From positions 744,001 through 808,000 of the forward strand of contig NW_026940638.1 of NCBI RefSeq assembly GCF_032062105.1: a DNA stretch of 64,000 nucleotides, read 5' to 3'. Under the pieces are notes generated by a model. The model was not told the origin of the DNA. It saw only the letters and a program-made list of their open reading frames with translations, and ran no database searches. The number at the start of each line of letters is the position of its first letter. The stretch's first letter is position 1. Positions 18,841 to 22,212 of this stretch are shown here, in pieces. This DNA is from Saccostrea cucullata. Taxonomy: Eukaryota. Position numbers and translations under genes: made by a program.

Positions 18841-19156
18841 CGGTCAATGACACAGTCTGTAGAGCACTCGCTCTGTGATCGGAAGATAGTGTGTTCGAAA
18901 CACTGCTTCGACTGCCTTTATCGATTAAAATTAGGCAGCAACTGTTCCTTCGCGAAGAATTCGACACTTTGAAGTGAAAGTTGTGGGTCCTTCGGATGAG
19001 ACCCTTAAAATCGAGGCTCAATGTCGTGGTTGGCGTTGAAACAATAAACAACCCTCACTGCGAAGTGGCACTGACTGCCGAGTTAAAGTATTCATTTGAA
19101 GCCTTTCACTGGTAGATGGTGACATCTCTATATGAGTAAACATTTCCAGCTGGACG
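18841..19156 (+). mobile_element. MD-type SINE embedded in the macrosatellite
   Basis: Same head and core as the 17621 copy. Confidence 0.8.
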
Positions 19157-19502
19157 TTATACTACACACAATATATTATATAAGAAGATTATTTTCGTAG
19201 TTTTCATTGGCTGAAAGAACGTCACATGAAATTCCTCCTTTTGTGATATCGATGCTAAAGCGCGTCCGCGGAAAATAATATCGCACGACACGCCGTTCGA
19301 TTGCACTAAAGTCACGTAGTACGTTACCTTATAATATAAGAAGCGTGAAGTGAACCATTGTGACGTAATGACAGTCAAGTCCGTTCAGTAAGGACTGTGT
19401 CAGTGCATTCAATTTGCGTGATTATATAATAAAGCTATTATGGACTTCAGTGAACGGTCAATATGTGGTTATAAGGTCTCCTGGCAATTGATATTGACCC
19501 CA
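19157..19502. mobile_element. Probable non-autonomous Crypton-like fragment
   Basis: CpG-rich insert that truncates the SINE tail. TTATA/ATTATATAAT motifs and GGTCAATAT...ATATTGACC inverted repeat resemble mollusc CryptonV non-autonomous elements (family call is inference). Confidence 0.4.
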
Positions 19503-20086
19503 GGCACAGAAATATCACATGGAAGTTATTCCTGAAAGATGATGGTCTACAAAGAAAACCTCCACTGGTCAATATCACATCAAAGTTTTACAAGGGAGAT
19601 GATGAAAACCTCCATCGGTCAATATCACATAGAAGTTAACCCTGGAAGATGATGGTCTACAAAAAAAAACTCCACCGGTCAATATCACATAGAAGTTTTA
19701 CCATGAAGATGATGAAAACCTTCACCGGTCAATATCACATAGAAGTTATCCCTGGAAGATGATGGTCTACAAAGAAAACCTCCACCGGTCAATATCACAT
19801 AGAAATTTTACCAGGGAGATGATGGTCTACAAATAAAACCTCCACCGATCAATATCACATAGAAGTTTTACCACAGAGATGATGAAAACCTCCATCGGTC
19901 AATATCACATAGAAGTTATCCCTGGAAGATGACGGTCTACAAAGAAAACCTCCACCGGTCAATATCACATAGAAGTTTTACCAGGGATCGAGATGATGGT
20001 CTACAAAGAAAATCTACATCGGTCAATATAACATGAATACATTCATCTGTCAATATTATATAGAATTATCCCGGGATAATTGTCTA

Positions 20087-20437
20087 TGTCACAGGTAGTG
20101 AAAAATCAAGTTCTCAGCCGGGACTCGAACCCAGGGCCCCTGGCGTACCGTGTCAGCGCTCTAAACACTGAGCTTTTGAGACCTGATATATTGACTGACC
20201 TTCACGCACCTGTGAATCCGGTGACATATTCCAACCCCTTTGTAGAAATTTGTAGAGTTAAGGAAATGCGTGAAGCATATTCCAAGGGAACAGTGGGTTT
20301 TGTACATACGGCGCCAAATGTCAAAGGTGGTGAAAAACCAAGTCTCAACCGAGACTCGAACCCAGGACCTCTGGCGTATCGTGCCAGCGCTCTAACCACT
20401 GAACTATTGAGACCCGATATAATTGCTGACGTTCACC
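20087..20437 (-). mobile_element. TRIM (miniature LTR retrotransposon) with tRNA-like cassettes in both LTRs (Helenus-type architecture)
   Basis: Complete 140-bp LTR TGTCAC...GTGACA (20087-20226). Minus-strand PPT AAAGGGGTTGGAATA (20227-20241). 92 bp between the LTRs. PBS TGGCGCCGTATG (20305-20316) 2 nt from the truncated second LTR (20319-~20437). Confidence 0.85.
20341..20414 (-). ncRNA. tRNA-like Pol III cassette inside the TRIM 5' LTR (not a decoding tRNA)
   Basis: GGTCTCAATAGTTCAGTGGTTAGAGCGCTGGCACGATACGCCAGAGGTCCTGGGTTCGAGTCTCGGTTGAGACT folds as a cloverleaf with A and B boxes and is followed by TTTTT. A second copy lies at 20109-20183. Confidence 0.75.
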
Positions 20438-20670
20438 TTTTTCGGTCAATACGGAATCATTTGAAGTTTTCCCTGGGAGTTAATTCTCCGCAAAGAAAAC
20501 CTTTATCGGAGATGAAGGTTTGTAAAGAAAACCTCCATTGGTCAGTTTAGAATCATTTACCATTTTTGAAGTATTCCCAGGAGTTGATTCTCTTCATTTA
20601 AAAATCTACATCGGTCAAAAACACATATAAATTCTCCCTGGGAGATAATGATCGATATTGAAAAGCTCCA

Positions 20671-21000
20671 TCGGTCAATCGGTACAACACTCGCCATAGG
20701 ATCGTGTGCTCGATTAACTACCGCGATTGACCTTAGTCGATGAATTAGACAGAAACTTTTCCTTCGCGAAATGCTCGTCACTGTGAAGTGAAAGTTGTGA
20801 GTCTTTCGGATGAGACCTTAAAAACCGAGGCCCAATGTCGCGGTAGGCATTGGCACGAGAAAAAAAATACCTCACCTCAATGGCCCTGAATGCCGTGTAA
20901 AAGTCTTAATTTTAAGGCCTTCAACGGTAGATGGTGACAACTCTAGTGAAAAAAAATCTCAAACTGGAAGTAAAACTACACACAGTGAATCAATCAGTCA
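20671..21000 (+). mobile_element. MD-type SINE embedded in the macrosatellite
   Basis: GTCTTTCGGATGAGACCTTAAAAACCGAGG core; same insertion phase as the other copies. Confidence 0.8.
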
Positions 21001-21160
21001 TTCATTCATTCAATATTAGATAGAAATTTTACTCGGAAGATATTGGTCTACAAAGAAAACGTCCACCTGTCAATATAACATAAAAGTTATCCCTGGGAGA
21101 CAATTGTCTGTATAAAAAAGTTATTCCTAAGAGATAATGATCTACATTGACAACCTCCAT

Positions 21161-22212
21161 CCGTCAATCGGTAAAACACTCGCTCTGTGATAGGAAGTTT
21201 GAATCAATGCCGCGACTGGCCTTACTCGGTAAAAAAAAATACACAGCAAGAGTTCCTTCGTGAAGTCCTCGGCAGTTCAAAGGGAAAGTTGTGGGTCTTT
21301 CGGAGGAGACCTTAAGGTTTCGTCAAAGGTCAACATGTCTAAAAAATTATTTTTACAATAGCTCCAAAACTATGTGTGGTATAAAGTCAAGAAGTTTACA
21401 GTTTATAAATATATCATTGATTAATAGATAGAAAGTATCACTTGATAACAAATATTTTAAAACAGATATTATTTGAGAAAATTGTATTAGAAAATGTGCA
21501 TATTTAAAGAAAAATGCACCTGCTTAATTCTGTCCTTTTTGTGAAAACCAACATTGTAGAAATAATATATGTTTATCATTGAAGGGCAAGTTGGGCGTGA
21601 ATGGTCTCTGAAAGGCTGTTATTGAAAGCATGACATGTATAAAGACAAGACCCCTATAGAATCGGCCATTTGCAATGTACTTTCACTTTCAAGTCTTGAC
21701 ATTTGGACAAAATAAACAGGGAAAACAACTTTCCAGAGGCTATCCAAGTCCAATTGCCCTTCATTGATAAACATATTTTGTTTCTGCAATGATGGTTTTC
21801 ACTAAGAGCATGGAATAAACTAGGTGTATTTTTTGAAAATATATGCATTTTTAAGAAGAATTTTTCTCAATTAATATTATTCCAAGTATTTTTTTAATAA
21901 AATGATACTTTCTATCTGTTAATCAATGAAAAATTTATAAACTGTAAAAGTTTCAGCTTTATACCTCACATAGTTTTGGGGCTATTGTAAAAATAAATTT
22001 TTGGACATGTTGACCTTTGACGAAACCTTAAAAGCCGAGGCCGTGTGTCACAATAGGCGTTGCATGATAAACAACCCTCACTGCTCAATTGCCGTTAGTG
22101 CCACATAAAAGTCTAAATTTGAAGCCCTTCAGCGGTAGATGGTGACATCTCTATCTTAGTGAAAAATACTCGAACTGGACGTAAAACAGCAAATAATAAT
22201 CAAACAATCAAT
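21161..22212 (+). mobile_element. MD-type SINE interrupted by a foldback DNA element
   Basis: Core split as GAGACCTTAA|...|TTAAAAGCCGAGG. Confidence 0.8.
21316..22027. mobile_element. Long-TIR foldback non-autonomous DNA transposon, TTAA TSD (Kolobok-like)
   Basis: GGTTTCGTCAAAGGTCAACATGTC...GACATGTTGACCTTTGACGAAACC termini, imperfect inverted arms of roughly 300 bp, TTAA on both sides. Confidence 0.8.

What the first reader, a model, noticed from the sequence alone, without database searches (positions are those of the whole stretch)
20087..20437. Miniature LTR retrotransposon whose LTRs are built around a tRNA-like Pol III gene
Seen on the minus strand: truncated 5' LTR ending TGACA, 2 nt, PBS TGGCGCCGTATG, a short non-coding interior, PPT AAAGGGGTTGGAATA, then a complete 140-bp LTR TGTCAC...GTGACA. 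Each LTR contains a cloverleaf with A and B boxes. This is an LTR-type analogue of a SINE: a Pol III promoter plus LTR cis signals, presumably borrowing Gag/RT/IN from an autonomous partner. Known analogues are plant Cassandra (5S in the LTR) and the recently described tRNA-bearing Helenus TRIMs, so the class may be known, but this family and its partner may not be. Standard tools would likely call it two tRNA pseudogenes.
Basis: partly seen in the sequence, partly recalled or inferred. Interest (0 to 1): 0.8.

Follow-up and report, generated by a model that had tools for sequence, protein, structure and literature searches.

The report
Old copy of Helenus tRNA-LTR element

Summary
It is not new.

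[quoted passage not shown] Each LTR contains a tRNA-like cloverleaf followed by a T-run.
- **Family in this genome.** The genome holds about 100 full copies and about 250 LTRs. Young copies are 384 bp (140 + 104 + 140).
- **Insertion and priming signals.** Fourteen of 19 distinct flank pairs have perfect 4-bp target-site duplications. One empty site skips exactly 388 bp. The PBS matches 13 nt of the host tRNA-Lys(CTT) 3' end.
- **Identity.** My majority consensus of 29 copies is letter-for-letter the published Helenus-4_SaGl consensus (Kojima 2024, PMC10886601, Saccostrea glomerata). The window copy is nearer to subfamily 4B and is old and dead: its LTRs are 88% alike, its PBS is broken and the interior carries a deletion.
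- **Still open.** Pol III transcription was not shown by the RNA data. No autonomous partner was pinned down; only a group of tRNA-Lys-primed Gypsy elements with similar LTR ends was found.
The scan noted a similar 361-bp element elsewhere in this genome (s1-701056).

The parts
20319..20436 (-). 5' LTR remnant (consensus positions 22-140; the first 21 bases are lost where it abuts satellite sequence)
   Evidence: BLAST to the family consensus, 89.9% identity; pairwise alignment
20341..20413 (-). tRNA-like cloverleaf in the 5' LTR, with the B box GGTTCGAGTCT at 20352-20362
   Evidence: Rfam tRNA 54.2 bits; ARAGORN tRNA-Ile(GAT) at 20340-20414; motif hit
20333..20337 (-). T5 run just after the tRNA-like part of the 5' LTR (looks like a Pol III terminator)
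   Evidence: read directly from the sequence
20305..20316 (-). Degenerate primer-binding site TGGCGCCGTATG, preceded by the TT linker at 20317-20318. Only the first 7 nt still match the tRNA-Lys(CTT) 3' end.
20227..20318 (-). Non-coding interior of 92 nt (104 in intact copies). A 12-16 bp deletion removes the 5' arm of the hairpin that lies before the PPT.
   Evidence: alignments; the hairpin in an intact copy
20227..20241 (-). Polypurine tract, mutated: AAAGGGGTTGGAATA against the family's AAAGAGGGGGAATA
20087..20226 (-). Complete 3' LTR, 140 bp, TGTCAC...GTGACA, 91.5% identical to the consensus
20110..20182 (-). tRNA-like cloverleaf in the 3' LTR (B box at 20121-20131), followed by a T5 run at 20101-20105
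   Evidence: Rfam tRNA 30.2 bits; motif hit; sequence
19509..20060 (.). Flanking 50/60/110-bp tandem array, which resumes at about 20463-20690. It is the insertion target, not part of the element.
   Evidence: the repeat finder; TRF

Best explanation
Window 20087-20436 (minus strand) is an old, inactive copy of the terminal-repeat retrotransposon in miniature Helenus-4/4B_SaGl, a 'TRIMp3' element of the oyster Saccostrea glomerata or a very close relative.

An intact element is 384 bp. It has two 140-bp LTRs (TGTCAC...GTGACA). Each LTR holds a tRNA-Thr-like cloverleaf with A and B boxes, followed by a T4-5 run. Between the LTRs lie a TT linker, a PBS complementary to the 3' end of host tRNA-Lys(CTT), about 75 nt of non-coding leader with a hairpin, and a polypurine tract.

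Shown here: the element inserts the way an integrase does, making 4-bp target duplications, and it has spread to about 100 full copies and about 250 LTRs.

Inferred, not shown:
- Pol III starts at the tRNA-like part of the 5' LTR, reads through that LTR's T-run, and stops at the T-run of the 3' LTR. That would make the tRNA-like stretch the R region.
- The RNA is then packaged, reverse-transcribed from a tRNA-Lys primer, and integrated by proteins of an autonomous Gypsy element.

This particular copy landed in a 60/110-bp satellite array. It later lost the first 21 bases of its 5' LTR and decayed in its PBS, PPT and hairpin.
For: - Structure and spread: more than 42 scored genomic matches out of 305 candidates. 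The alignment of 30 loci shows a conserved LTR-PBS-interior-PPT-LTR layout with unrelated flanks.
- Target-site duplications: 14 of 19 distinct flank pairs have perfect 4-bp duplications, and one has 5 bp.
- Empty site: one joint skips 388 = 384 + 4 bases, with 4 letters shared by both sides.
- Primer: the host tRNA-Lys(CTT) genes end ...CACGTTGGGCG, which gives a 13-nt PBS match once CCA is added.
- tRNA-like part: 62 bits with a perfect cloverleaf in young copies. Its D arm is identical to that of host tRNA-Thr(AGT).
- Identity: the majority consensus of 29 copies is identical to the published Helenus-4_SaGl LTR and interior. The published sizes of 140/104/384 and the 4-bp duplication agree.
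- Copy numbers from junction patterns: LTR-PBS junction 117, PPT-LTR junction 92, LTR core 249.
- Decay of the window copy: LTR-to-LTR identity 88%, K2P distance 0.13.
Against: - Pol III transcription is not shown. In oligo-dT RNA-seq the depth over the element is only 0-4. The random-primed runs give a contig covering LTR + interior, but carried-over DNA could explain it.
- A T4-5 run lies inside the 5' LTR, so a full-length Pol III transcript needs read-through.
- No autonomous element with the same LTR ends or the same interior was found.
- The window copy shows no target-site duplication, because its 5' end is lost.
Confidence: 0.93

Rival explanations
1. Same element, different engine. 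The genomic RNA is made by Pol II or by read-through from neighbouring promoters. The tRNA-like module then serves another purpose, such as a packaging or dimerisation structure, or RNase P/Z processing that sets the RNA ends, and is not a Pol III promoter.
For: A T4-5 run directly after the tRNA-like part of each LTR should stop much of Pol III inside the 5' LTR. No RNA data here show a Pol III-type start. The paper itself says the promoter function is unvalidated.
Against: The A and B boxes and the whole cloverleaf are kept across Helenus families in several phyla, while the rest of the LTR is not. The precedent, Cassandra, is reported to be transcribed from its Pol III promoter. Oligo-dT libraries show almost no coverage.
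Confidence: 0.15
2. This is not a retrotransposon. It is two tandem tRNA pseudogenes, two tRNA-derived SINE copies, or one unit of a local tandem repeat.
For: ARAGORN and Rfam on their own report tRNA genes. The copy sits inside a satellite array.
Against: The 351-bp unit recurs at more than 40 unrelated loci with sharp ends at TGTCAC/GTGACA, 4-bp target duplications, a conserved PBS and PPT, and one empty site. It has no LINE-type tail and no poly(A).
Confidence: 0.02

Closest known systems
Helenus-4_SaGl and Helenus-4B_SaGl (Kojima 2024, Biology 13:119, PMC10886601; Saccostrea glomerata)
   Same: The consensus of this genome's copies is letter-identical to Helenus-4_SaGl (LTR 140, interior 104, total 384, 4-bp duplication, tRNA-Lys PBS). 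The window copy carries the diagnostic letters of subfamily 4B in the interior and LTR (single T in CAGTGG, CACTGTTCCCTTGGAATATGCTTCAC).
   Different: Nothing at family level. The window copy is a degraded member: truncated 5' LTR, mutated PBS and PPT, and an interior deletion.
Helenus-3_CGi / Helenus-3_CVi (Crassostrea gigas, C. virginica)
   Same: Related LTRs with the same ends (TGTCACCGGGT...CACCTGTGACA), the same tRNA-like core and the same PBS.
   Different: The first about 25 bases of the LTR differ, and the interiors have diverged. These are versions of the lineage in other species.
Cassandra (plant TRIM with 5S rRNA in its LTRs) and Ajax (nemertean)
   Same: The same design: a non-coding TRIM whose LTRs carry a Pol III-type small-RNA gene.
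   Different: Those carry a 5S rRNA module, make 5-bp duplications and live in different hosts. This element carries a tRNA module and makes 4-bp duplications.
tRNA-derived SINEs (SINE2)
   Same: A tRNA-like head with A and B boxes; short, non-coding and dependent on a partner.
   Different: SINEs have one head, a LINE-derived or A-rich tail and variable duplications. They have no LTRs, PBS or PPT.

Membership tests
Helenus (TRIMp3, tRNA-bearing TRIM) | Two direct LTRs flanking a short non-coding interior that starts with a PBS and ends with a PPT | tested here: met
   Family. Window copy: all parts present but degraded.
Helenus (TRIMp3, tRNA-bearing TRIM) | tRNA-derived sequence with A and B boxes inside each LTR | tested here: met
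   Rfam tRNA 54.2 and 30.2 bits in the window and 62 bits in young copies; ARAGORN tRNA-Thr(GGT).
Helenus (TRIMp3, tRNA-bearing TRIM) | 4-bp target-site duplication (animal Helenus) | tested here: met
   14 of 19 distinct flank pairs are perfect; the empty site skips 384 + 4. This cannot be recovered for the window copy itself.
Helenus (TRIMp3, tRNA-bearing TRIM) | Transcription from the Pol III promoter in the LTR | tested here: inconclusive
   Oligo-dT RNA-seq depth is 0-4. Contigs from random-primed runs cover the element, but DNA carry-over is not excluded.
Helenus-4_SaGl / 4B_SaGl | Sequence identity to the published consensus | tested here: met
   The majority consensus of 29 copies equals the published LTR and interior letter for letter. 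The window copy is 90-91% identical in its LTRs.
Helenus-4_SaGl / 4B_SaGl | [quoted passage not shown] | tested here: met
   The host tRNA-Lys(CTT) genes end CACGTTGGGCG. This gives a 13-nt match in Helenus-4 and 12 nt in 4B, but only 7 contiguous nt in the window copy.
Cassandra / Ajax | 5S rRNA-derived sequence in the LTR | tested here: not met
   The Rfam scan finds tRNA and no 5S rRNA.
tRNA-derived SINE (SINE2) | A single tRNA-like head with a LINE-related or A-rich 3' tail, and no LTR, PBS or PPT | tested here: not met
   The alignment of 30 loci shows paired LTRs, a PBS, a PPT and fixed 4-bp duplications.

The most novel reading that the evidence does not exclude
The oyster Helenus families 3 and 4 may be moved by one group of tRNA-Lys-primed Gypsy elements whose LTRs end CTGTNACA followed by TT and the PBS. 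A chimera on another contig (C6122) reads Gypsy LTR, then Helenus-3 interior and LTR, then Gypsy leader. It is joined exactly at a shared 23-nt LTR-end/PBS stretch. A second locus (L097) has a Helenus-4-type LTR with a Helenus-3-type interior. Both would be traces of exchange between RNAs or DNAs that use the same machinery, and would give the first concrete autonomous partner for an animal Helenus. None of this lies in the window.
Probability: 0.3. Interest if true: 0.4.

Novelty: already known. Interest (0 to 1): 0.1.

Why it matters
It matters little as a discovery, because the class (Helenus, TRIMp3) and this very family were published in 2024 from this oyster species. It matters for annotation. 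tRNA finders report these LTRs as tRNA-Thr/Ile genes (about 250 LTRs in this genome), which inflates tRNA counts. The two open questions from the paper remain open: whether Pol III really drives the element, and which Gypsy element moves it. Young, consensus-identical copies and a present/absent site in this genome would be good material for testing both.

Tried and rejected
**Partner hunt**
- I searched the genome for the extended tRNA-Lys PBS (37 sites). This found several LTR families, but none shares more than the PBS and a few end bases with Helenus-4.
- The exact Helenus-4 LTR end plus PBS, outside Helenus LTRs, gave only 2 mutated Helenus copies.
- A relaxed version gave diverged Helenus copies and small unknown families that I could not fetch.
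- The hairpin before the PPT never occurs without the PPT (0 hits).
- Two Gypsy families with gag-PR-RT-IN and a Lys PBS were examined: C9738/C16848 and C6122. They resemble Helenus-4 only in ...TGTTACA, the TT linker, the PBS and a G-rich PPT. That is too generic to name a partner.

**Expression**
- One read-laying run gave no start or end pile-ups on the element and almost no polyA reads. I rejected it as evidence either way.

**Solo LTRs**
The figure of about 50 solo or fragmentary LTRs is therefore only arithmetic from pattern counts.

**Readings rejected**
- Tandem tRNA pseudogenes, SINE copies, or a satellite unit (see the rival explanations).

**Species**
- The species name rests only on the identical consensus. 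The assembly size here (1.17 Gb, 23,869 contigs) was not checked against any published S. glomerata assembly.

Full report
**What is in the window.**
Read on the minus strand, the stretch holds these parts in order:
- a 5' LTR remnant at 20319-20436;
- a TT linker at 20317-20318;
- the string TGGCGCCGTATG at 20305-20316;
- a short interior that runs to 20227 and ends in the purine-rich AAAGGGGTTGGAATA (20227-20241);
- a complete 140-bp LTR at 20087-20226 with TGTCAC...GTGACA ends.

The two LTR copies were picked up independently as a direct repeat (83% over 104 nt). They are 88% alike over 117 aligned positions (K2P 0.13). Rfam scores both as tRNA, at 54.2 and 30.2 bits against a threshold of 29. 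ARAGORN calls only the better one, as tRNA-Ile(GAT). Each tRNA-like part is followed by a T5 run. The B-box motif occurs nowhere else in the 64 kb, where none is expected by chance.

**It is a dispersed family with the hallmarks of LTR retrotransposition.**
The 351-bp stretch matches more than 42 scored places, out of 305 candidates, in the window's 1.17-Gb genome. An alignment of 30 loci with their flanks shows sharp common ends and unrelated flanks. The full structure is:
- LTR of 140 bp;
- TT linker;
- PBS TGGCGCCCAACGT;
- about 75 nt of leader;
- PPT AAAGAGGGGGAATA;
- LTR of 140 bp.

The total is 384 bp. Of 19 distinct flank pairs, 14 show a perfect 4-bp target-site duplication and one shows 5 bp. 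Several loci share flanks, meaning one insertion was later duplicated along with its host repeat.

Reads and contigs laid on a young copy include a joint that skips 388 bases, with 4 letters fitting either side. That equals the element plus one duplication copy, so it is an empty site.

Junction patterns with up to 2 mismatches give these counts:
- LTR-PBS junctions: 117, of which roughly 15 belong to other families;
- PPT-LTR junctions: 92;
- LTR cores: 249, against 3 for the control.

This means about 100 full copies and, by arithmetic, some 50 solo or fragmentary LTRs.

**Primer and tRNA-like module.**
The genome's tRNA-Lys(CTT) genes end ...CCCCACGTTGGGCG. With CCA added, the PBS of Helenus-4 is complementary over 13 nt and that of 4B over 12 nt. 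In the window copy only 7 contiguous nt survive.

In young copies the LTR module is a perfect cloverleaf (62 bits). ARAGORN reads it as tRNA-Thr(GGT). Its D arm is identical to that of the host's tRNA-Thr(AGT). Position 33 of the anticodon loop is C rather than the near-universal U, so a working tRNA is unlikely; that last step rests on general tRNA knowledge.

The interior of an intact copy folds with a hairpin (GUAGAAUUCG-AGGA-CGAAUUUCUAC) just before the PPT (z = -2.1). Comparable stem/AGGA-type hairpins can be seen before the PPT in other published oyster Helenus interiors. I read that by eye and did not test it.

**It is a published family.**
[quoted passage not shown] In animals they make 4-bp duplications, and 51 families were reported from pteriomorph bivalves.

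The paper's supplementary FASTA holds Helenus-4_SaGl and Helenus-4B_SaGl from Saccostrea glomerata. My majority consensus of 29 copies from this genome is identical, letter for letter, to the published Helenus-4_SaGl LTR (140) and interior (104). The paper's table lists 140/104/384 with a 4-bp duplication, and 139/103/381 for 4B. Its PBS figure assigns both to tRNA-Lys-CTT.

The genome is therefore S. glomerata or a very close relative. I did not check the 1.17-Gb assembly size against any published assembly.

The window copy carries the 4B-type letters in the LTR and most of the interior. It is 90-91% identical to the consensus in its LTRs.

**State of the window copy.**
Against the consensus it shows four kinds of damage:
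- It lacks LTR positions 1-21, where satellite-like sequence abuts the element.
- It has four changes in the PBS.
- It has a 12-16 bp deletion that removes the 5' arm of the hairpin.
- It has an altered PPT.

It lies in a 50/60/110-bp tandem array that continues on both sides. No target duplication can be recovered. It is an old, dead copy.

**How it most likely works.**
*Shown.* The element inserts by an integrase-type reaction with 4-bp duplications. It carries the cis signals for tRNA-Lys-primed reverse transcription. It has no coding capacity.

*Inferred, following the Cassandra model and the paper's discussion.* Pol III starts at the tRNA-like part of the 5' LTR. It must read through that LTR's T4-5 run and then stops at the same run in the 3' LTR. 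This would make about 80 nt of tRNA-like sequence the R region, with the roughly 45 bases before the tRNA-like part as U3 and the last 12-14 bases as U5. Proteins of a Gypsy element would then do the rest.

*RNA evidence.* The data I could lay do not decide this:
- Oligo-dT libraries cover the element at depth 0-4, while the flanks, which belong to another repeat, reach 600.
- Two random-primed metatranscriptome runs contain an error-free 274-nt contig of LTR + interior + 30 nt. With about 100 genomic copies, carried-over DNA would explain it equally well.

**Partner.**
No autonomous element shares Helenus-4's LTR ends or interior. The genome does hold several Gypsy families with a tRNA-Lys PBS, a TT linker and ...CTGT(T/A)ACA ends:
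- C9738/C16848, with gag-like, protease, RT and integrase domains;
- C6122, with RT/RNase H;
- others seen only at their junctions.

These resemblances are generic, so the partner of Helenus-4 remains unknown. The paper likewise reports only PBS-level similarity to Gypsy elements for animal Helenus.

**Side observations outside the window.**
On C6122 a Gypsy LTR is followed by a Helenus-3_SaGl interior and LTR, and only then by the Gypsy's own leader. The joints fall in a 23-nt stretch (LTR end, TT, PBS) that the two elements share exactly. The Gypsy LTR also appears to start TGTAGTAG/TGTAATAG, against Helenus-3's TGTGGTAG, but I placed that LTR start by eye and it is uncertain. This points to that Gypsy family as the partner or recombination mate of the sister family Helenus-3_SaGl.

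Locus L097 has a Helenus-4-like LTR (80% identity) with a Helenus-3-like interior. That suggests the two lineages exchange modules. I followed neither observation further.

**Verdict.**
The element belongs to an already described family in what is probably the species it was described from. This copy is a decayed relic. Interest is low. The scan's notes list a similar 361-bp tRNA-LTR element elsewhere in this genome (s1-701056). Its length equals that of the published Helenus-1_SaGl. I did not examine it.

Noticed in passing
L079 (G000:C6122:5500-15499), positions about 2008-2290; continued in L080: Chimeric tandem Gypsy element. The order is Gypsy LTR end (CCCCTGTTACA), then TT-PBS, then Helenus-3_SaGl interior, then Helenus-3_SaGl LTR (with a 12-bp deletion in its tRNA part), then TT-PBS, then the Gypsy leader. 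The joints lie in a 23-nt stretch shared exactly by both elements. The second tandem unit lacks the Helenus insert. This Gypsy family is a probable partner or recombination mate of the sister family Helenus-3_SaGl.
   Followed up: partly
L097 (G000:C9708:38000-38600): An LTR about 80% identical to the Helenus-4 LTR is joined to an interior of Helenus-3 type (…gggtgttctctggtgggtgagagtgattg…). This is apparent module exchange between the two Helenus lineages.
   Followed up: no
window 19509-20060, 20463-20690, 21010-21180: A tandem array with 50/60/110-bp (and 170-bp) periods flanks the element on both sides. It is part of a larger unit repeated about 490 and about 1815 bp apart (pairs 19066-19170 / 20881-20984 and 20629-20821 / 21118-21315). 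It is probably a composite repeat with internal satellites. I did not identify it.
   Followed up: no
L034, L039 (G000:C6323, C12954): Host tRNA genes lie in a tandem array with a unit of about 1.27 kb. Each unit holds tRNA-Lys(CTT), tRNA-Thr(AGT) and tRNA-Met(CAT).
   Followed up: no
L005:1330-1479 and 1864-2013 (flanks of a young Helenus-4 copy): The flanks belong to another high-copy repeat that is very abundant in the RNA-seq runs (depth up to about 600 in oligo-dT reads). The Helenus-4 insertion was copied at least 10 times together with this host repeat or as assembly duplicates (loci L005-L007, L010, L012, L014, L015, L017, L022, L026).
   Followed up: no
G000:C12155:79505, C12817:233964, C12942:8536, C13528:26614: A small family whose LTR end is also GTGACA + TT, but which has a different PBS-like string (TGGCGCCRAAAGAGCGATTCACC).
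   Followed up: no
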